Below, in pieces: positions 18,048 to 28,222 of a stretch of 64,000 nt of DNA. The notes below the pieces were generated by a model. The model was not told the origin of the DNA. It saw only the letters and a list, made by a program, of their open reading frames with translations, and ran no database searches. Position numbers and translations under genes: made by a program. Source of the stretch: Anolis carolinensis (lineage: Eukaryota); the NCBI RefSeq assembly GCF_035594765.1, contig NC_085844.1:237538107-237602106 (forward strand). Direction: 5' to 3'. How positions within the stretch are numbered: the stretch's first letter is position 1; each line of letters opens with the position of its first letter.

Positions 18048-19214
18048 CTAGCTTGGGGACCCGGCGGTGCCCGGGTCATTTGAGAAAGGCATTGTTTGCC
18101 TGTGTTCCAAGTGTAGCGTATATCCAATGTCAGGTGGGTTCAGTGGGTGCGGGTGAGCTACAACTCCCATATGCAAGTGCCATCGTCAAGTGTCCATCCC
18201 TCTCCAAACAGAGCCAGTATGTAGAGTAGGTCATGGGGGCTCCTTGTGCCATGTTTGGTCTTGATCAGTCATTTGTGTGGGTCGCGGTGCTGTCAGGAAG
18301 TGAGTGAAGGTATTGGAATTGCCATCGTCCATGGTCCATCATCCTCCAAACTGCACCTGGGTGTAGAGTGAGTCCTGGGTGTTGTCTGTGTCAAGTTTGG
18401 TCTGGGGGTGACAGTGGTCTTGGGAAGTGAGTGAACATACTGTAAGTCCCATCATGCAAGGTCCAAGCTCTTTCAAACCTCACCAAGATGTAGAGTGGGC
18501 CATGGTGGCTCTATGTGCCAAGTTTGGTCTTGATCAGTCATTGGTGGGGGTCACAGTAGTCCCAGGAAGTGAGTGAAGATAGTGGAAGTCCCATCATCCA
18601 CGGTCCCTCCTCCCCCAAACTGCACCAGGATGTAAAGTGGGCTACCCTGCACATGCGTGTCAAGTTTGATACAGTTTTGTCATTGATGGACATCACAGTG
18701 GTTTGTGGGAGGTGAATTGGATGAAGGCACTGCAAATCCCATAATCCTTGGTCCATCCTCCGTCAAACTGCTGCAGCATGTGAAGTGTGTCATTTGGGAT
18801 ATGTGTGCCTGGTTTGGTTCAGTTCTGTGATTTGTGGCAGTTGCTGTGGTCTCAAGAAGTGAGGGAAGGTACTGCAAATTCCATCATCCTTGGTCCATCC
18901 TGCCCTAATATACATCAGGGCGTAAAGGGGGCCACAGGGGTTCTGTGTGCCAAGTTTGGTCCATTTCCATCATTGGTGGGCATTGCAGTAGTCTGTGGGA
19001 GTGAAAGTGTTTGAAAGTACTGCAAATCCCATCCTCCATGGCCCATCATCCCCCAAATGGCACCAGGTCATAAAATGGGTTATAGGGGTTATGTGTGCCA
19101 AGTTTGGGCCAGGTCTGTCATTCCTGGCGGTCACAGTGGCCTGTGAAAGTGGCGGCCAATCAGAAAGCTGCCACATACTCGCAAACAAACATTGACTTTT
19201 ATTATATATATAGA
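18048..19214 (-). mobile_element. Non-autonomous Helitron with an internal ~145-bp tandem array
   Basis: The minus strand begins TCTATATATATAATAAAAG and ends in hairpin GACCCGG-gcaccg-CCGGGTC then CTAG|T. About 7 diverged units (ccaagtttgg near 18249, 18391, 18518, 18661, 18808, 18950, 19098). The right boundary may be 19224. Confidence 0.8.
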
Positions 19215-21213: not shown

Positions 21214-21256
21214 AGCTTTCCATCAATGTCAACACTTAATTTTAAAGGAGATATCC

Positions 21257-22230
21257 TGTCAGGACCCAGGCTGCAAGGCACCAATAACCATACACAGAGG
21301 CCAGAATCTATCTAATATCTTTATTGAAGGAATATATAAAGTTAATAAAAACAAGTGTAGAAAATAGTCCAGAATTAGACCTTTCAGGAAAGGTCAAAAT
21401 TAGTCCAAAAAAGCAATGTCCAATATGAAATATTAAGGTCCAAAGTTGTAATCCAATAACCGAAACACTCACTTTGCCAGGCAAAGTGAGGGGAGATGGC
21501 AAGGTCCTTTAGTCCATGAACTTGAGCAAGGCTAGGAAATAACTTGATACTTGAAACAAGGCTTGAATCGTGGAACAAGGTAGCAAGGAACAAGAACAAG
21601 GTCCGTGGAATAACTTGGTAAAATCCGTGAAACAAGGCAAGGTTTAGTCCTGGGAAACAAGGCAAGGTCCGTAGGTAAACAAAGGCTGGGAAACAGGAGC
21701 GAAGGCTGGAAACAAGGACAAGGCTTGAGCAGGAACGAGGCTTGAAACGGAGCGCGCTGTCCAGACACAACTCGCTCCGGAGGCTGACGAATTGACTCCG
21801 CAAAGTTACTTCGCGGGTAAAACACCTATATAGAGTCTAACTTTCCCGCCGAAGCAGTTCTCTGGGAACCAGAAACGAAAGCTAAACTCTGAGGCCAGAT
21901 GTTTGACTCCTTAAAGATTCTCACGAAAAGCAGGCTTAATTGGCTAAATTCTTAGCTGTTATTCTAGCACTCCTGCGCGAGGCTGCTTCCAAACCTCTCT
22001 GTTGTTTACAAAATTCATGGCGAGAGAACACAGGAGATGTAGGCTCAGGGTTTGTTTGACATACTTCTGGGACACAACTTTCTTGCAGGTGCAAGGTTCC
22101 CAGATCTGCCTGGGAAAGATCTTGCTGAGAAGATTCCAGTTCTGACTGGGAAGGTAAAAAACCCAAGTTTTCTTCTTCATCAGGCATCACAATGTCATGA
22201 GCAGGACTACAAGGCCCATGAGTCATCACA
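21257..22230 (-). repeat. 3' LTR (974 bp)
   Basis: Direct repeat of 26711-27684; minus strand TGTGATGAC...CCTGACA; preceded by the PPT. Confidence 0.98.
21320..21325 (-). terminator. LTR polyadenylation signal AATAAA
   Basis: Plus-strand tttatt about 65 nt from the LTR end, followed on the minus strand by GT-rich sequence. Confidence 0.7.
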
Positions 22231-25200
22231 CTATCCCCCTCCTCAAGCCCCCTCCCAAACTGGGACTCTCTCCCCAAGGCGCGAGGTCGTGGCTTGGCGG
22301 GATAGGTCTGATGAAAGCGACGGGTTAGATCAGGAGCATGGACTGTGGAGGCGTCTTCCCAAGAGCGTTCCTCAGGGCCAAAACCCACCCAGTCAATGAG
22401 ATATTGCAGGCGGCGGCGGTGAAAGCGAGAATCCAAAATGTCCTCAACCTCGAACTCCTCCTCCCCATTCATCAAAACAGGAGGGGGGGCCGGTTGGTCT
22501 GTATCAGGACGCACACCATCCGCCGGAAGGAGCAGGGAGCGGTGAAACACTGGGTGAATGCGCATTGAACGCGGAAGTTGGAGTTTGAAAGTCACGGGGT
22601 TTAATTGCGCCACCACAGGATAGGGGCCAATGAAACGGGCATCTAACTTCCGGCAAGGGCGATGGGAGGGCAAAAAGCGAGTGGACAGAAAAACCCGATC
22701 TCCTACCTTGATTTCGGGGCCCGGTTGGCGATGTTTGTCCGCGTGACGTTTATAGTCCTCCTTGGCTTGGTCTAGTTGTTGGAGCAAAAGTTGTTGCACC
22801 GCTGTGAGTTCCTGCAGCCAATCCTCTGCTGCGGGGACTTCTGAAGTTTCAATGACAGGGGGAAAGAAACGTGGATGGAAGCCGTAGTTTGCAAAGAACG
22901 GCGTTTCTTTTGTAGAAGCCTGGACTCCATTGTTGTAGGCAAACTCTGACAGTGGTAATAGAGAAGCCCAATTATCCTGTTGGTAGTTTACATAACAGCG
23001 AAGGTACTGTTCCAAAGTGGCATTGGTGCGCTCCGTTTGCCCATCTGTTTGAGGATGATGAGCTGAAGATAAACGAGAGTCTATGCCCAATAGTTTTTGT
23101 AGTGCCTTCCAGAAACGAGAGGTGAATTGAGATCCACGGTCTGTGACCAGACTCTTGGGCAATCCATGTAATCTGAAAACATGTTGGAGGAATAGATCTG
23201 CCGTCTCTTTGGCCGTGGGAAGGCCTTCACAGGGAATGAAATGGGCTAACTTGGTGAAAAGGTCCACCACCACTAGGATCGTGGTGAATCCACAGGAAGG
23301 TGGTAAGTCAGTGATAAAATCCGCAGAGATTATTTCCCATGGGCGAGATGGAGTAGGAAGGGGATGCAGAAGCCCTGAGGGCTTCTCCCGTCTTGTCTTG
23401 GAGCGCTGGCATACTGGGCAGGTGTTGACATATTTTTCCACATCCTTGCGGATCTTGGGCCACCAGAAATCTCTTAGGATCAAATGCATGGTTTTAAATA
23501 GTCCGAAATGCCCTGCTGGCTTGCAGTCATGACACAGACGAAGTGCTTTTTCCCTGCCCTGCCCTGGTGGGATATAAACATGATTTCTATAGCAAAGCAG
23601 TCCATCCTTAAGTGAGAAGGGAAATTGCAATCCTTGACGGAGTTGGTCTTGCGCCCAGGCATCTGCTTGCTGACTAGCCCTGATTTCTTGAGCACAGAGG
23701 GGTCCAAGAGTAGGAGAAGTTGAATCAATGAGAGTGGATTTGGTGTTCCCCACTGTGAGCGTGGCAAAGTTCTCGGGTTGTAATAGTTGGGATTCAAAGG
23801 TCTCCTTGCGTCCTGCAGCGTATTCCGGTTTACGTGACAGGGCGTCTGCTTGCTTGGTTTGAGCTGGGGTTACATAATGAATCTGGAAGTTAAAACGTTC
23901 AAAGAATAAAGCCCAACGTTGTTGCCTCTGATTTAGTTTGCGGGCGGTTCTTAGATGCTCTAGATTCCGATGATCAGTATGGACTTCAATGGGAAATTTG
24001 GCCCCTTCTAGCCAATGTCTCCAAGTTTCAAAGGCTGCCTTTATGGCCAATAGTTCCTTTTCCCAGATGGTGTAATTTCTCTCTGGTGCTGTTAGTTGAC
24101 GGGAATAAAAGGCACAAGGATGAAGGTGATCTCCCACCGGTTGTAGGAGTACAGCCCCAATTGCCACATCAGAGGCGTCTGCTTGCACAACAAAAAGGGT
24201 TTCAGGATCTGGGTGCTGAAGAATTGGCTGGGACGTGAATAATTTCTTTAGTTGCTGGAACCCTTTCTCTGCTTGATCTGTCCAGCGGAAGGGCTGTTTC
24301 CCACGGATGCAGCTGGTGATTGGGTCAGACCAGCGGGCAAAATCTGGAATGAACTTGCGGTAATAGTTCGCGAACCCCAAGAAACGCTGCACCTCTTTCT
24401 TGTTGGTTGGCGCCCGCCATTCCAATACTGCTGAAACCTTTGCCGGGTCCATGGAGAGCCCTAGAGGCGAGATGCGGTACCCCAGGAAATCTACCTCTTG
24501 TAGATCAAAAGCGCATTTTTCCAGCTTGGCATAGAGCCCATGATCCCGCAATCGTTGTAACACCATTTTGACGTGGTTCTCATGCTCTGATTGTGATCTA
24601 GAAAACACCAAAAAATCGTCGAGGTAGATTATCAAGAACCGATCTAGATAATCCTGAAAGATGTCATTGACAAAATGCTGGAACGTTGCGGGAGCTCCGC
24701 ATAATCCATAATTCATAACTCGGGACTCAAATAATCCGAATTTAGTCTGGAAGGCGGTCTTCCACTCGTCCCCTTCTCTGATGCGAACTAGATTATAAGC
24801 CCCCCGAAGATCCAGCTTGGTGTAGACCTTGGCTCCTCGGAGTCGGTCTAGAAGGTCCGAGATTAAAGGCAGGGGATAGCTGTTTCGCTTTGTGATATTG
24901 TTCAATGCTCTATAGTCCACCACCAAGCGTAAGTCTCCTGACTTCTTTTTCACAAACATCACCGGGGAGGCGGCTGGGGATTGAGAGGGTCTGATGAATC
25001 CCTTGCGAAGGTTTGTCTCTATGAACTCCCTGAGAGCTTCTTGCTCCGGTTCAGTCAGGGAGTAGAGATGCCCTCGCGGGATCGGGGCCCCCTCCACCAA
25101 GTCAATGGCACAGTCATAAGGTCTATGTGGGGGTAGTCTCTCGGCTTCTTTTTCATTGAATACATCCCAATACTCGGAGTACTTCTTTGGCAAGGTGATA

Positions 25201-25700
25201 ATGGGCTCGGTGTCTGTGGTATGGCAGACCTTGGCTACGAGGCAATGGTTTTGGCAGTACTTTGAAGCGAACTGCAGCTCCCTGTTGGACCAGGAGATGC
25301 TTGGGTCGTGAAGTGTCAGCCATGGAATCCCCAAAATCACAGGGAAATGGGGAACCTCAGTAACAAAGAAGGAAATCTCTTCCATATGTTCTCTTATCCA
25401 CATCCTGGTGGGTTCCGACCACTGGCTTACGGGGCCCGTCTTGAGGGGGCGGCCGTCAATGGCTTGCACCACACGGGCATTCTTGAAGTCATGATATTGT
25501 AATCCCAGAGAGTCGGCATACTCTCTATCAATGAAATTGTTGGTGGCTCCGGAGTCTATCATGGCGTGGATCATGACGGGTCCCTTTTTTGCTGACCATA
25601 AGGTGACCACTAGAAGGAACAGGACCCCGGTTGGCGGCTCTTGAATGGGTTTTTTGACCGGGTTGGCGAGCCTCTCTACGCCCGGTCGTTGGCTTCCCCC
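21936..25700 (-). CDS. pol: Pol polyprotein: aspartic protease, RT, RNase H, integrase, GPY/F motif, chromodomain and an LTR-encoded tail; -1 frame relative to gag
   Basis: Motifs DSGA (PR), YLDD (RT), DAS/E/TDH/DALS (RNase H), H..H..CPVC and D-D-E (IN), GPY, and chromodomain EFEVEDILDSR..YLIDWVGFGPEERSWE. The ORF track gives 21936-25610; the frame stays open upstream into the end of gag. Confidence 0.97.
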   Translation of the reverse strand, partial: GGSQRPGVERLANPVKKPIQEPPTGVLFLLVVTLWSAKKGPVMIHAMIDSGATNNFIDREYADSLGLQYHDFKNARVVQAIDGRPLKTGPVSQWSEPTRMWIREHMEEISFFVTEVPHFPVILGIPWLTLHDPSISWSNRELQFASKYCQNHCLVAKVCHTTDTEPIITLPKKYSEYWDVFNEKEAERLPPHRPYDCAIDLVEGAPIPRGHLYSLTEPEQEALREFIETNLRKGFIRPSQSPAASPVMFVKKKSGDLRLVVDYRALNNITKRNSYPLPLISDLLDRLRGAKVYTKLDLRGAYNLVRIREGDEWKTAFQTKFGLFESRVMNYGLCGAPATFQHFVNDIFQDYLDRFLIIYLDDFLVFSRSQSEHENHVKMVLQRLRDHGLYAKLEKCAFDLQEVDFLGYRISPLGLSMDPAKVSAVLEWRAPTNKKEVQRFLGFANYYRKFIPDFARWSDPITSCIRGKQPFRWTDQAEKGFQQLKKLFTSQPILQHPDPETLFVVQADASDVAIGAVLLQPVGDHLHPCAFYSRQLTAPERNYTIWEKELLAIKAAFETWRHWLEGAKFPIEVHTDHRNLEHLRTARKLNQRQQRWALFFERFNFQIHYVTPAQTKQADALSRKPEYAAGRKETFESQLLQPENFATLTVGNTKSTLIDSTSPTLGPLCAQEIRASQQADAWAQDQLRQGLQFPFSLKDGLLCYRNHVYIPPGQGREKALRLCHDCKPAGHFGLFKTMHLILRDFWWPKIRKDVEKYVNTCPVCQRSKTRREKPSGLLHPLPTPSRPWEIISADFITDLPPSCGFTTILVVVDLFTKLAHFIPCEGLPTAKETADLFLQHVFRLHGLPKSLVTDRGSQFTSRFWKALQKLLGIDSRLSSAHHPQTDGQTERTNATLEQYLRCYVNYQQDNWASLLPLSEFAYNNGVQASTKETPFFANYGFHPRFFPPVIETSEVPAAEDWLQELTAVQQLLLQQLDQAKEDYKRHADKHRQPGPEIKVGDRVFLSTRFLPSHRPCRKLDARFIGPYPVVAQLNPVTFKLQLPRSMRIHPVFHRSLLLPADGVRPDTDQPAPPPVLMNGEEEFEVEDILDSRFHRRRLQYLIDWVGFGPEERSWEDASTVHAPDLTRRFHQTYPAKPRPRALGRESQFGRGLEEGDSVMTHGPCSPAHDIVMPDEEENLGFLPSQSELESSQQDLSQADLGTLHLQESCVPEVCQTNPEPTSPVFSRHEFCKQQRGLEAASRRSARITAKNLAN
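22231..22245 (-). other. Polypurine tract (PPT)
   Basis: Minus strand TGAGGAGGGGGATAG immediately before the 3' LTR TG. Confidence 0.9.
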
Positions 25701-26668
25701 GCCGGCTGTGTGCCAGCCGCCTCAGACGCCTTCGTCTCCGTGGAGGACGCCGCCGCAAGACGGGCGGCGGGCTTCCCTTTGGCTGGGCACTCTCTGGCGA
25801 AGTGGCCCCCGTTCCCGCAGTACCAACAGAGGTTTAAGCGTTGACGACGGGCCTTCTCGGCGGCATCTAGTCTGGGACGCACGTTGCCCAACTGCATCGG
25901 TACCTCCTCGCTTCCCCTGGGGTATGGGGTTGGTGGTGGGGGTCTCCACACTGGACGTGGCTGAACGCTGGCGGGAGCGGGGGGTTTTGCCCCAGCTCTA
26001 CCGCTCTGGCCTCGAACCCACTGTTTCCTGTTGGCAATCATGACTTCAGCCCGTAAACATTGATCAATGAGTGCTTCGAGGGTCTGGGGAGGATCCACCT
26101 TGGAGATTTCCTCCAGCATTTCGATGTTGAGACCCTCCCGGAATTGTCCTCTAAGGGCTACATCATTCCAGCCGGTGTTGTGGGCCAGCACTCGGAACTC
26201 GGCTATGTACTGAGACATGGGTCTGTCTCCTTGGAAGAGGCGGCGGAGTTTGTGACCGGCTGCCTCCAAATTGTCCTCGATTCCCCAAGTCTCCTTAAGG
26301 TGGTCCAAGAAGCGTTGCGCTGATCTTAGGTGTGGAGAGGCTTGGTCGAACAGTGCCGTCGCCCAGTTGGCCGCTGGCCCGTCTAGAAGACTGTAGACCC
26401 ACGCCACTTTGATGTCTTCTTGGGGAAATTCGGCAGCACGGGCCTCTAGATAAGCTTGACATTGGCGACGGAAAACATGAACCTTAGAAGCTTCTCCAGT
26501 AAACTTGGTTGGCAACGCCATGGCCGGAAGACGGATTCCGCGTTCCTTCAAACCCTTTATTTCCCCATCCTGTGCATTGAGCTTATCACGGATTCGGTCC
26601 ACCTCATCCTTGTCGATGGTGTAGGTAATCGGCTGGCCGCCCGGTCCAGATCCGGCTCCGGTAGACAT
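25676..26668 (-). CDS. gag: Gag (capsid plus CCHC nucleocapsid), sushi/PEG10-like
   Basis: 330 aa; LPTKFTG, retrotransposon-gag core LFQG..YIAEFRVLA..WND.AL..QFREGL, EVPMQLG, zinc knuckle CWYCGNGGHFAREC. Confidence 0.97.
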   Translation of the reverse strand: MSTGAGSGPGGQPITYTIDKDEVDRIRDKLNAQDGEIKGLKERGIRLPAMALPTKFTGEASKVHVFRRQCQAYLEARAAEFPQEDIKVAWVYSLLDGPAANWATALFDQASPHLRSAQRFLDHLKETWGIEDNLEAAGHKLRRLFQGDRPMSQYIAEFRVLAHNTGWNDVALRGQFREGLNIEMLEEISKVDPPQTLEALIDQCLRAEVMIANRKQWVRGQSGRAGAKPPAPASVQPRPVWRPPPPTPYPRGSEEVPMQLGNVRPRLDAAEKARRQRLNLCWYCGNGGHFARECPAKGKPAARLAAASSTETKASEAAGTQPAGEANDRA

Positions 26669-26698
26669 ACTGGCCGAGGTTAATTGGTGCTTAGGGTG

Positions 26699-26708
26699 GC
26701 GGAGTCAA
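26699..26708 (-). other. Primer-binding site, self-priming type (not tRNA-complementary)
   Basis: TTGACTCCGC lies 2 nt after the 5' LTR, lacks TGG, and is the exact complement of LTR 27255-27246. Confidence 0.8.
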
Positions 26709-26710
26709 AC

Positions 26711-27684
26711 TGTCAGGACCCAGGCTGCAAGGCACCAATAACCATACACAGAGGCCAGAATCTATCTAATATCTTTATTGAAGGAATATATAAAGTTAAT
26801 AAAAACAAGTGTAGAAAATAGTCCAGAATTAGACCTTTCAGGAAAGGTCAAAATTAGTCCAAAAAAGCAATGTCCAATATGAAATATTAAGGTCCAAAGT
26901 TGTAATCCAATAACCGAAACACTCACTTTGCCAGGCAAAGTGAGGGGAGATGGCAAGGTCCTTTAGTCCATGAACTTGAGCAAGGCTAGGAAATAACTTG
27001 ATACTTGAAACAAGGCTTGAATCGTGGAACAAGGTAGCAAGGAACAAGAACAAGGTCCGTGGAATAACTTGGTAAAATCCGTGAAACAAGGCAAGGTTTA
27101 GTCCTGGGAAACAAGGCAAGGTCCGTAGGTAAACAAAGGCTGGGAAACAGGAGCGAAGGCTGGAAACAAGGACAAGGCTTGAGCAGGAACGAGGCTTGAA
27201 ACGGAGCGCGCTGTCCAGACACAACTCGCTCCGGAGGCTGACGAATTGACTCCGCAAAGTTACTTCGCGGGTAAAACACCTATATAGAGTCTAACTTTCC
27301 CGCCGAAGCAGTTCTCTGGGAACCAGAAACGAAAGCTAAACTCTGAGGCCAGATGTTTGACTCCTTAAAGATTCTCATGAAAAGCAGGCTTAATTGGCTA
27401 AATTCTTAGCTGTTATTCTAGCACTCCTGCACGAGGCTGCTTCCAAACCTCTCTGTTGTTTACAAAATTCATGGCGAGAGAACACAGGAGATGTAGGCTC
27501 AGGGTTTGTTTGACATACTTCTGGGACACAACTTTCTTGCAGGTGCAAGGTTCCCAGATCTGCCTGGGAAAGATCTTGCTGAGAAGATTCCAGTTCTGAC
27601 TGGGAAGGTAAAAAACCCAAGTTTTCTTCTTCATCAGGCATCACAATGTCATGAGCAGGACTACAAGGCCCATGAGTCATCACA
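26711..27684 (-). repeat. 5' LTR (974 bp)
   Basis: By eye it differs from the 3' LTR only at 27378 (t vs c) and 27431 (a vs g). Confidence 0.98.
27255..27286 (-). promoter_or_regulatory. LTR TATA box and predicted TSS
   Basis: TATATA at 27286-27281, with GCGGAGTCAA beginning 31 nt after the first T (27255). Confidence 0.7.
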
Positions 27685-27899
27685 TATCCAAAGGGCTGAC
27701 AGTTTTCCAAACTGGGTTCAACACACTTTGAATAGCTCATTTAAAGTTTGATTAAACCCTAAAGAGGATTTACTGCCCTGCTGAGATGGGAGCCAACAGC
27801 TGCAATTGCTTCTCATATTCAAAACAGTCCTGCAGTGATATCTCAGAGTGTGTATAGCTGTGGTCAGACTTTATGTTGAGTAGGGATTCCAGGGATGGA

Positions 27900-28222
27900 C
27901 AGTAGTGTCTCGCTTATCCAACGTAAACGGGCCGGCAGAATGTTGGATAAGCGAATATGTTGGATAATAAGGAGAGATTAAGGAAAAGCCTATTAAACAT
28001 CAAATTAGGTTATGATTTTACAAATTAAGCACCAAAACATCATGTTATACAACAAATTTGACAGAAAAAGTAGTTCAATACACAGTAATGCTATGTAGTA
28101 ATTACTGTATTTACGAATTTAGCACCAAAATATCCCAATGTATTGAAAACATTGACAACAAAAATGTGTTGGATAATCCATAATGTTGGATAAGCGAGTG
28201 TTGGATAAGTGAGACTCTACTG
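27900..28222. mobile_element. Tc1/mariner-type MITE
   Basis: TIRs cagtagtgtctcgcttatccaac / gttggataagtgagactctactg; TA on the right flank. Confidence 0.88.

What the first reader, a model, noticed from the sequence alone, without database searches (positions are those of the whole stretch)
26699..27286. Self-priming LTR retrotransposon: the PBS is complementary to its own predicted mRNA 5' end
Seen in sequence: after the 5' LTR (..CCTGACA) the minus strand reads GT-TTGACTCCGC, without the TGG that would pair with a tRNA CCA end. Within the LTR, 31 nt after the start of TATATA (27286-27281), the transcript would begin GCGGAGTCAA (27255-27246), the exact 10-nt complement. Established: fission-yeast Tf1 primes reverse transcription with the first ~11 nt of its own mRNA, released by RNase H, and this has been proposed for vertebrate Tf1/sushi elements. 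Inference: this is an intact amniote element using tRNA-independent priming across a ~545-nt R-U5 loop.
Basis: partly seen in the sequence, partly recalled or inferred. Interest (0 to 1): 0.8.

Follow-up and report, generated by a model that had tools for sequence, protein, structure and literature searches.

The report
Self-priming sushi-type retrotransposon in anole
This is a young, apparently intact Ty3/gypsy retrotransposon of the Tf1/sushi group in a lizard genome, and it seems to start reverse transcription with the first 10 bases of its own RNA instead of a tRNA; the trick is already known for this group, so this is a well-supported but ordinary case.

Summary
A 6,428-bp LTR element lies on the minus strand (27684-21257). 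Its LTRs are 974 bp with 2 differences, and it has a 5-bp target duplication, GGATA. Two bases after the 5' LTR sits TTGACTCCGC, with no TGG. Its exact complement, GCGGAGTCAA, lies in the LTR 31 nt after the start of TATATA.

The decisive test was comparative. Eight elements from seven lineages were checked: two Anolis subfamilies, Gekko, three fishes, a frog and one metagenome contig. All have a 9-12-nt exact complement between a site 1-2 nt after the LTR and a site 28-33 nt after a TATA box. The sequences differ, and all nine helix positions covary.

Self-priming of the Tf1 kind is therefore well supported. The transcription start and the RNase H cut remain unmapped, because the public runs gave only short contigs.

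The kind is known. Self-priming was shown for Tf1 and proposed for vertebrate Tf1/sushi elements (Butler 2001), and active chromoviruses in Anolis are described. First-stage readers of this scan flagged the same feature on other DNA of this genome.

Verdict: a real new member of a known kind, of modest interest.

The parts
21257..27684 (-). Whole LTR retrotransposon, 6,428 bp
   Evidence: LTR pair found by self-alignment. It is the only copy in the window.
27685..27689 (.). Target-site duplication GGATA, upstream copy
   Evidence: The flanks were read. The same 5 bases follow the 3' LTR.
21252..21256 (.). Target-site duplication GGATA, downstream copy
   Evidence: The related Anolis copy L001 also has a 5-bp duplication, GCATG.
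26711..27684 (-). 5' LTR, 974 bp, TGTGATG...CCTGACA
   Evidence: It is 99.8% identical to the 3' LTR, with 2 differences at 27431 and 27378. Both are CpG to TpG/CpA changes in the 5' LTR.
21257..22230 (-). 3' LTR, 974 bp
27281..27286 (-). TATA box (TATATA) of the LTR promoter
   Evidence: Read. It is kept at the same distance in L001. TATA boxes lie 28-33 nt upstream of the primer-like site in all eight elements.
27246..27255 (-). Predicted transcription start and 10-nt self-primer, GCGGAGTCAA (start of R)
   Evidence: Exact complement of the PBS. Covaries with the PBS across lineages. Pairs with the PBS in the minimum-energy and centroid folds. The TSS itself is not mapped.
26699..26708 (-). 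Primer-binding site TTGACTCCGC, 2 nt after the LTR end
   Evidence: There is no TGG for a tRNA CCA end.
26774..26779 (-). AATAAA polyadenylation signal 68 nt before the LTR end, implying R of about 500 nt and U5 of about 45 nt
   Evidence: A late AATAAA is described as typical of Sushi LTRs (PMC3601003). The R/U5 border is inferred.
26662..26764 (-). Predicted U5-leader hairpin that encloses the PBS and has the gag AUG at its base
   Evidence: Consensus fold of the two Anolis subfamilies gave 30 pairs, one of them compensatory (C-G to U-A). Duplex versus shuffles gave p=0.06 and 0.008. This is weak evidence from only two sequences.
25676..26668 (-). gag, 330 aa: RTL/PEG10-type capsid (DUF4939, Retrotrans_gag) and CCHC knuckle
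21936..25721 (-). pol frame (-1 relative to gag, 46-nt overlap): protease, RT, RNase H, integrase, chromodomain. Its last 98 codons lie inside the 3' LTR.
   Evidence: The catalytic motifs DSG, YLDD, HHCC and D,D,E were read in the translation.
22231..22256 (-). Purine-rich tract directly upstream of the 3' LTR (plus-strand primer site)
   Evidence: Read.
27355..27364 (-). Second 10-nt complement to the post-LTR sequence (GGAGTCAAAC) in U3, probably not the primer
   Evidence: It has no TATA box upstream and is changed to GGAGTCATGC in L001.

Best explanation
This is a recently inserted chromovirus of the vertebrate Tf1/sushi lineage in Anolis, with its coding capacity intact. It most likely primes minus-strand DNA synthesis with its own RNA. 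RNA polymerase II starts about 31 nt after the LTR TATA box, so the transcript begins GCGGAGUCAA. These 10 bases fold back over a 537-nt R-U5 loop onto the complementary site 2 nt after U5. The element's RNase H then cuts after the duplex and leaves a 10-nt RNA primer, from which reverse transcriptase copies U5 and R. What is shown here: the anatomy, the exact complementarity, its fixed distance from a TATA box and its covariation in relatives. What is inferred by analogy with Tf1: the start site, the cut and the priming.
For: - **Anatomy:** exact coordinates and the 10-nt complement are confirmed, with 2/500 shuffles as good.
- **Family features:** PR-RT-RNase H-IN-chromodomain, Tf2-type SH3 and RTL/PEG10-type gag, plus a 5-bp TSD.
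- **Comparative test:** eight elements from seven lineages have a 9-12-nt exact complement between a PBS 1-2 nt after the LTR and a site 28-33 nt after a TATA box.
- **Covariation:** the sequences differ, 9 of 9 helix positions show two or more Watson-Crick pair types, cognate pairs match 9/9 and non-cognate pairs match 3.7/9 on average.
- **Conservation:** the Anolis subfamily with 81% gag identity keeps primer, PBS and the 31-nt spacing inside an otherwise diverged LTR.
- **Folding:** the 5' end pairs with the PBS in the MFE and centroid folds of the window RNA and in 5 of 7 MFE folds of the elements checked.
- **Duplex limits:** in all but one lineage no pair is possible on either side of the duplex; Astyanax allows one G-U at its inner end.
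- **Literature:** the Tf1 mechanism uses the first 11 bases and an RNase H cut between bases 11 and 12 (PMC7175516). Self-priming is 'implicated from fungi to vertebrates' (PMC4600332) and Butler et al. 2001 is cited for vertebrates (PMC6317226).
Against: There is no direct evidence for the start site. All public runs were held as roughly 90-nt contigs, which cannot show RNA ends. No host tRNA set was available to exclude a complementary tRNA fragment. The whole 601-nt leader folds no better than shuffles (z = -0.04), so only the closing helix is special. A second complementary site in U3 exists in this copy. Two of seven MFE folds do not use the 5'-PBS pairing.
Confidence: 0.85

Rival explanations
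1. The 5'-end/PBS pairing is real and selected, but it serves another purpose, such as circularising the leader for packaging, dimerisation or control of gag translation. On this reading, priming uses some other primer.
For: The PBS lies inside a predicted U5-leader hairpin whose base includes the gag AUG.
Against: The paired site sits 1-2 nt after U5 in every lineage, which is where a minus-strand primer must anneal to make a correct LTR end. No other candidate primer site was seen. The same layout is the proven primer in Tf1 (PMC7175516).
Confidence: 0.07
2. The element is primed by a host tRNA or an internal tRNA fragment, as copia-type elements use tRNA halves. On this reading the match to the LTR is incidental.
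For: Host tRNAs could not be searched. No tRNA genes occur in the window or in the fetched loci.
Against: No TGG follows the LTR in any of the eight elements. The PBS differs between lineages although vertebrate tRNAs are conserved, and it changes together with the LTR site.
Confidence: 0.04
3. The match is a chance 10-nt complement with no function.
For: A 10-mer can match somewhere in a 974-nt LTR. 2 of 500 shuffles did as well, and a second 10-nt match exists in U3.
Against: The same result appears in seven independent lineages, always about 30 nt after a TATA box and always 1-2 nt after the LTR. Shuffles reached the observed length in 0-5 of 500 for each element.
Confidence: 0.01

Closest known systems
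Tf1 and Tf2 of Schizosaccharomyces pombe (and Tj1 of S. japonicus)
   Same: These are Ty3/gypsy elements with a chromodomain integrase. Their PBS is complementary to the first bases of their own mRNA rather than to a tRNA. They make a 5-bp target duplication. The Tf2-type SH3 domain is also found here.
   Different: The primer here is 10 nt, against 11 in Tf1 (PMC7175516). The loop between primer and PBS is much longer (537 nt), and R is about 500 nt. gag and pol lie in two frames with a 46-nt overlap, whereas Tf1 has a single frame and Tj1 a gag stop codon (PMC4600332 for Tj1; Tf1 from my own knowledge). Here the host is an amniote. RT identity to a Tf2-named protein is only about 39%.
Vertebrate Tf1/sushi elements (sushi-ichi of pufferfish; amn-san and its relatives; the GyDB 'V-clade')
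   Same: They belong to the same clade by best hits and by the RT-RNase H tree. They share the RTL/PEG10-type gag, an AATAAA close to the LTR end (PMC3601003), and self-priming as proposed by Butler et al. 2001 (cited in PMC6317226 and PMC4600332).
   Different: This family belongs to a squamate-specific branch (SH-aLRT 99). I could not read Butler et al. 2001, so I cannot say whether reptile elements were covered there. No open paper in the library links self-priming and Anolis.
PEG10, RTL1 and other mammalian RTL/SIRH genes
   Same: gag carries the same RTL1-8/LDOC-type capsid domain (PF16297) and a CCHC knuckle. Reptile chromoviruses are regarded as living relatives of the progenitors of these genes (PMC3670739).
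   Different: Those are single-copy host genes without LTRs or a PBS. This is a multicopy mobile element. The cluster of a 99% identical pol protein has 366 member sequences, and thousands of contigs match the element.
tRNA-primed retroviruses and Ty3
   Same: The PBS position is 2 nt after U5, a purine-rich tract precedes the 3' LTR, and a U5-leader stem surrounds the PBS.
   Different: There is no TGG and no tRNA complementarity. The primer comes from the element's own RNA.

Membership tests
Tf1/sushi group of self-priming Ty3/gypsy chromoviruses | pol order protease-RT-RNase H-integrase with a C-terminal chromodomain | tested here: met
   Pfam hits RVT_1, RT_RNaseH, Integrase_H2C2, rve, SH3_Tf2-1 and Chromo, in that order, plus weak aspartyl protease hits. 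DSG, YLDD and the D,D,E motifs were read.
Tf1/sushi group of self-priming Ty3/gypsy chromoviruses | RT phylogeny groups the element with vertebrate sushi-like and fungal Tf-like elements | tested here: met
   In the RT-RNase H tree of 31 rows, the window element falls in a squamate clade (99) within a vertebrate clade (96), opposite the fungal, protist and Tf2-named rows. Limits: a quick search, no non-chromoviral outgroup, and no sequences of Tf1 or sushi-ichi themselves.
Tf1/sushi group of self-priming Ty3/gypsy chromoviruses | The sequence after the 5' LTR is not complementary to a tRNA 3' end | tested here: met
   No TGG follows the LTR here or in the seven other elements. Complementarity to internal tRNA fragments could not be tested, because no tRNA set was available.
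Tf1/sushi group of self-priming Ty3/gypsy chromoviruses | The PBS is complementary to a short stretch of the element's own LTR | tested here: met
   The match is 10 nt and exact. It is 9-12 nt in all eight elements and covaries. Shuffle controls reached it in 0-5 of 500.
Tf1/sushi group of self-priming Ty3/gypsy chromoviruses | That stretch is the 5' end of the mRNA | not testable with these tools
   The support is indirect only. The stretch lies 28-33 nt after a TATA box in all elements, and the pairing stops at the predicted first base. The runs available were contigs without RNA ends.
Tf1/sushi group of self-priming Ty3/gypsy chromoviruses | RNase H cleavage of the duplexed RNA releases the primer, which stays on strong-stop DNA | not testable with these tools
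   An RNase H domain is present. The biochemistry is known only for Tf1 (PMC7175516).
Tf1/sushi group of self-priming Ty3/gypsy chromoviruses | 5-bp target-site duplication | tested here: met
   GGATA here and GCATG in L001.
Tf1/sushi group of self-priming Ty3/gypsy chromoviruses | Extra helix next to the primer-PBS duplex (the U5-IR-like stem required in Tf1, as I recall from Lin and Levin 1998; that paper was not readable here) | tested here: inconclusive
   GUCAG at +14 to +18 can pair with CUGAC at the LTR end. Across the eight elements, however, such pairing is not better than shuffles (p 0.05-0.9).

The most novel reading that the evidence does not exclude
This squamate family is still active and is the first amniote system in which tRNA-independent self-priming could be studied. 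It has features not described for Tf1: a 10-nt primer acting across a loop of more than 500 nt, and a PBS held in a U5-leader hairpin whose base contains the gag start codon. That layout could couple priming to translation. It would also be a living model of the ancestors of PEG10 and the RTL genes.
Probability: 0.25. Interest if true: 0.45.

Novelty: new member of a known kind. Interest (0 to 1): 0.3.

Why it matters
The finding confirms, with covariation across fishes, frogs and squamates, that the self-priming layout of Tf1 persists in a living amniote lineage. The Anolis copies are young: the LTRs differ at 2 of 974 positions. Mammals lost active elements of this clade and kept only domesticated genes such as PEG10 and RTL1. 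A well-described active relative in a lizard is therefore a useful reference for that history and for annotating LTR elements that lack a tRNA-type PBS. It does not change what is known about the mechanism.

Tried and rejected
1. **TSS from public reads.** All 24 runs were held as contigs and none is on record as RNA. Laying four of them gave thousands of roughly 90-nt unitigs and no ends. The flank at 27685-27900 appears in only two runs. This gives no evidence either way on expression.
2. **Helix next to the primer.** The pairing GUCAG:CUGAC is not above chance across the eight elements.
3. **U3 site at 27364-27355 as an alternative primer.** I rejected it as the main primer because it has no TATA box and is not conserved in L001.
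4. **tRNA complementarity.** No tRNA genes occur in the window or in seven loci, so there is no host tRNA test.
5. **Loci that gave no usable LTR.** L004 (a Tf2-named protein from an unidentified assembly) had no LTR pair within the fetched DNA, and its only 9-nt match is unconvincing. P0060 returned no DNA.
6. **Papers not held.** Butler et al. 2001, Lin and Levin 1997 and 1998, and Esnault and Levin 2015 were unavailable. What I say about them comes from citing papers or from memory, and is marked as such.
7. **Global folding.** The leader as a whole is not unusually stable (z = -0.04).

Full report
**What is there.** A complete LTR retrotransposon lies on the minus strand from 27684 to 21257 (6,428 bp).
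- Its LTRs are 974 bp, running TGTGATG...CCTGACA: the 5' LTR is 27684-26711 and the 3' LTR is 22230-21257.
- The LTRs differ at only two positions, 27431 and 27378. Both are CpG to TpG/CpA changes in the 5' LTR.
- The element is flanked by a 5-bp duplication, GGATA.
- A purine-rich tract abuts the 3' LTR.
- gag (26668-25676, 330 aa) has the RTL1-8/LDOC-type capsid domain, Retrotrans_gag and a CCHC knuckle.
- pol is 1,224 aa from 25610, and its frame is open from 25721. It carries protease, RT, RNase H, integrase, a Tf2-type SH3 and a chromodomain.
- pol is in the -1 frame and overlaps gag by 46 nt. Its last 98 codons run into the 3' LTR.
- This is the only copy in the window.

**Host.** Proteins 99% identical to pol are named Anolis carolinensis, and one cluster holds 366 member sequences. 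A gag 81% identical lies on an Anolis carolinensis chromosome. Contigs of every run examined hold thousands of variant pieces of the element, so the family is abundant.

**The observation.**
- TATATA is at 27286-27281.
- GCGGAGTCAA is at 27255-27246, 31 nt after the first T of TATATA.
- The LTR ends at 26711, followed by GT and then TTGACTCCGC at 26708-26699.
- There is no TGG.
- The 10-mer occurs nowhere else in the window apart from the 3' LTR copy.
- Two of 500 dinucleotide shuffles of the LTR gave an equally long complement to the first 16 nt after the LTR.
- A second 10-nt complement, in a register shifted by 2, lies in U3 at 27364-27355. It has no TATA box upstream and is altered in the related subfamily, so I do not take it for the primer.

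**The decisive test: relatives.** I fetched loci through gag and pol homologues and defined LTR pairs by self-alignment. For each element I then searched the LTR for the complement of what follows it. In each row below, the LTR site and the PBS are exact complements.

| Element | Site in the LTR | PBS after the LTR |
|---|---|---|
| Anolis, window and L001 | GCGGAGTCAA | TTGACTCCGC |
| Gekko | GTGCTGGCAA | TTGCCAGCAC |
| Pungitius | GTGAGGTATT | AATACCTCAC |
| Astyanax | GCGAGGTATT | AATACCTCGC |
| Labeo | GTCCGGGCT | AGCCCGGAC |
| Ranitomeya | GCCTGATTGT | ACAATCAGGC |
| ENA metagenome contig (L008) | ATTCCGGTTCAA | TTGAACCGGAAT |

- In every case the PBS begins 1 or 2 nt after the LTR.
- In every case the LTR site begins 28-33 nt after a TATA box.
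- All nine aligned helix positions show two or more Watson-Crick pair types. Cognate pairs match at 9 of 9 positions; non-cognate pairs match at 3.7 on average.
- Shuffles reached the observed length in 0-5 of 500 per element.
- In all but one lineage no pair is possible on either side of the duplex; Astyanax allows one G-U at its inner end.
- The Anolis subfamily with 81% gag identity keeps primer, PBS and the 31-nt spacing while the rest of U3 and R has diverged.

This pattern is what self-priming predicts. It is hard to reconcile with a tRNA primer, whose PBS should be conserved rather than changing together with an LTR site.

**Structure.**
- Folding the predicted RNA from 27255 to 26655 pairs the first 10 bases with the PBS in both the minimum-energy and the centroid structure.
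- The same pairing appears in the MFE folds of 5 of 7 elements.
- The leader as a whole is not unusually stable (z = -0.04).
- A short helix next to the duplex (GUCAG with CUGAC at the LTR end) resembles the extra stem required in Tf1, as I recall it. Across the eight elements it is no better than shuffles.
- In the two Anolis subfamilies, U5 and the leader can form a long hairpin (26764-26662) that encloses the PBS and ends at the gag AUG. It has one compensatory change. With only two sequences this is a lead, not a finding.
- AATAAA at 26779-26774, 68 nt before the LTR end, implies R of about 500 nt and a short U5. A late AATAAA is described for Sushi LTRs (PMC3601003).

**Placement.** In an RT-RNase H tree of 31 proteins, the window element groups with other Anolis, Gekko, Podarcis and snake proteins (SH-aLRT 99). 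That group sits inside a vertebrate clade with tuatara, frogs and fishes (96), opposite fungal, chytrid, algal and Tf2-named proteins. The metagenome element L008 falls on the non-vertebrate side and still has the self-priming layout. The tree was a quick search without a non-chromoviral outgroup and without Tf1 or sushi-ichi themselves.

**Mechanism proposed.** Transcription starts at about 27255. The first 10 bases anneal to 26708-26699. The element's RNase H cuts after the duplex, and the 10-nt RNA primes synthesis of U5-R strong-stop DNA. That DNA then transfers to the 3' R. The two bases between PBS and U5 give the usual two extra terminal bases for integrase processing. Only the anatomy and its covariation are shown here. 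The remaining steps follow from the Tf1 work, in which the first 11 bases pair with the PBS and RNase H cuts between bases 11 and 12 (PMC7175516).

**What could not be done.** No run is on record as RNA, and all were held as contigs. The laid contigs are roughly 90-nt unitigs that show no starts or ends. No tRNA genes were available for a complementarity test.

**Known or new.**
- Self-priming is established for Tf1/Tf2. [quoted passage not shown]
- Butler et al. 2001 is the reference cited for vertebrates (PMC6317226). I could not read it.
- Full-length chromoviruses in Anolis and other reptiles are described as active (PMC3670739).
- No open paper in the library links self-priming with Anolis.
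- First-stage readers of this scan noted the same feature at several other places in this genome. Those notes are unchecked.

The finding is therefore a correct and well-supported new member of a known kind.

**Limits I kept to.** I compared natural copies only. One functional test is referred.

Noticed in passing
window 21936-22230 (-); L002 12909-13033: The pol frame runs 98 codons past the purine-rich tract into the 3' LTR. The Gekko relative's pol also extends into its 3' LTR.
   Followed up: partly
window 25649-25721 (-): gag and pol overlap by 46 nt in the -1 arrangement. The gag stop codon and the GGGGGAA run before it are kept in the Anolis subfamily L001. The A_AAA_AAC heptamer lies after the gag stop and is not kept in L001. 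How pol is reached from gag remains open.
   Followed up: partly
window 27431 and 27378: The only two LTR differences are CpG to TpG/CpA changes in the 5' LTR. At 27431, all other copies in four runs carry the 3' LTR base. This fits methylation-driven decay of this copy's promoter LTR.
   Followed up: partly
window 27257 joined to 27647: One contig in each of three runs (X1, X3, X10) joins base 27647, 38 nt into U3, to 27257, 2 nt before the predicted start of R, skipping 389 nt. The run X15 does not show this joint. It may be an LTR variant lacking most of U3. It is unexplained.
   Followed up: no
window 27673-27679 (-): A perfect AP-1-type heptamer, TGACTCA, sits at positions 6-12 of the LTR. 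The related motif GGAGTCAA recurs in U3 here (27362-27355) and in U3 of the stickleback element.
   Followed up: no
window about 26980-27200 (-): Much of R consists of degenerate pyrimidine-rich repeats of the type CCTTGYYTTGTTTC.
   Followed up: no
L008 2616-2768: A metagenome contig carries a relative that groups with chytrid and fungal elements. It has a 12-nt primer/PBS pair and only 129 nt between them.
   Followed up: partly
window 18172-19151: A tandem array with a period of about 145 nt (alternating spacings of 142 and 148), with copies 69-77% alike, lies outside the element.
   Followed up: no
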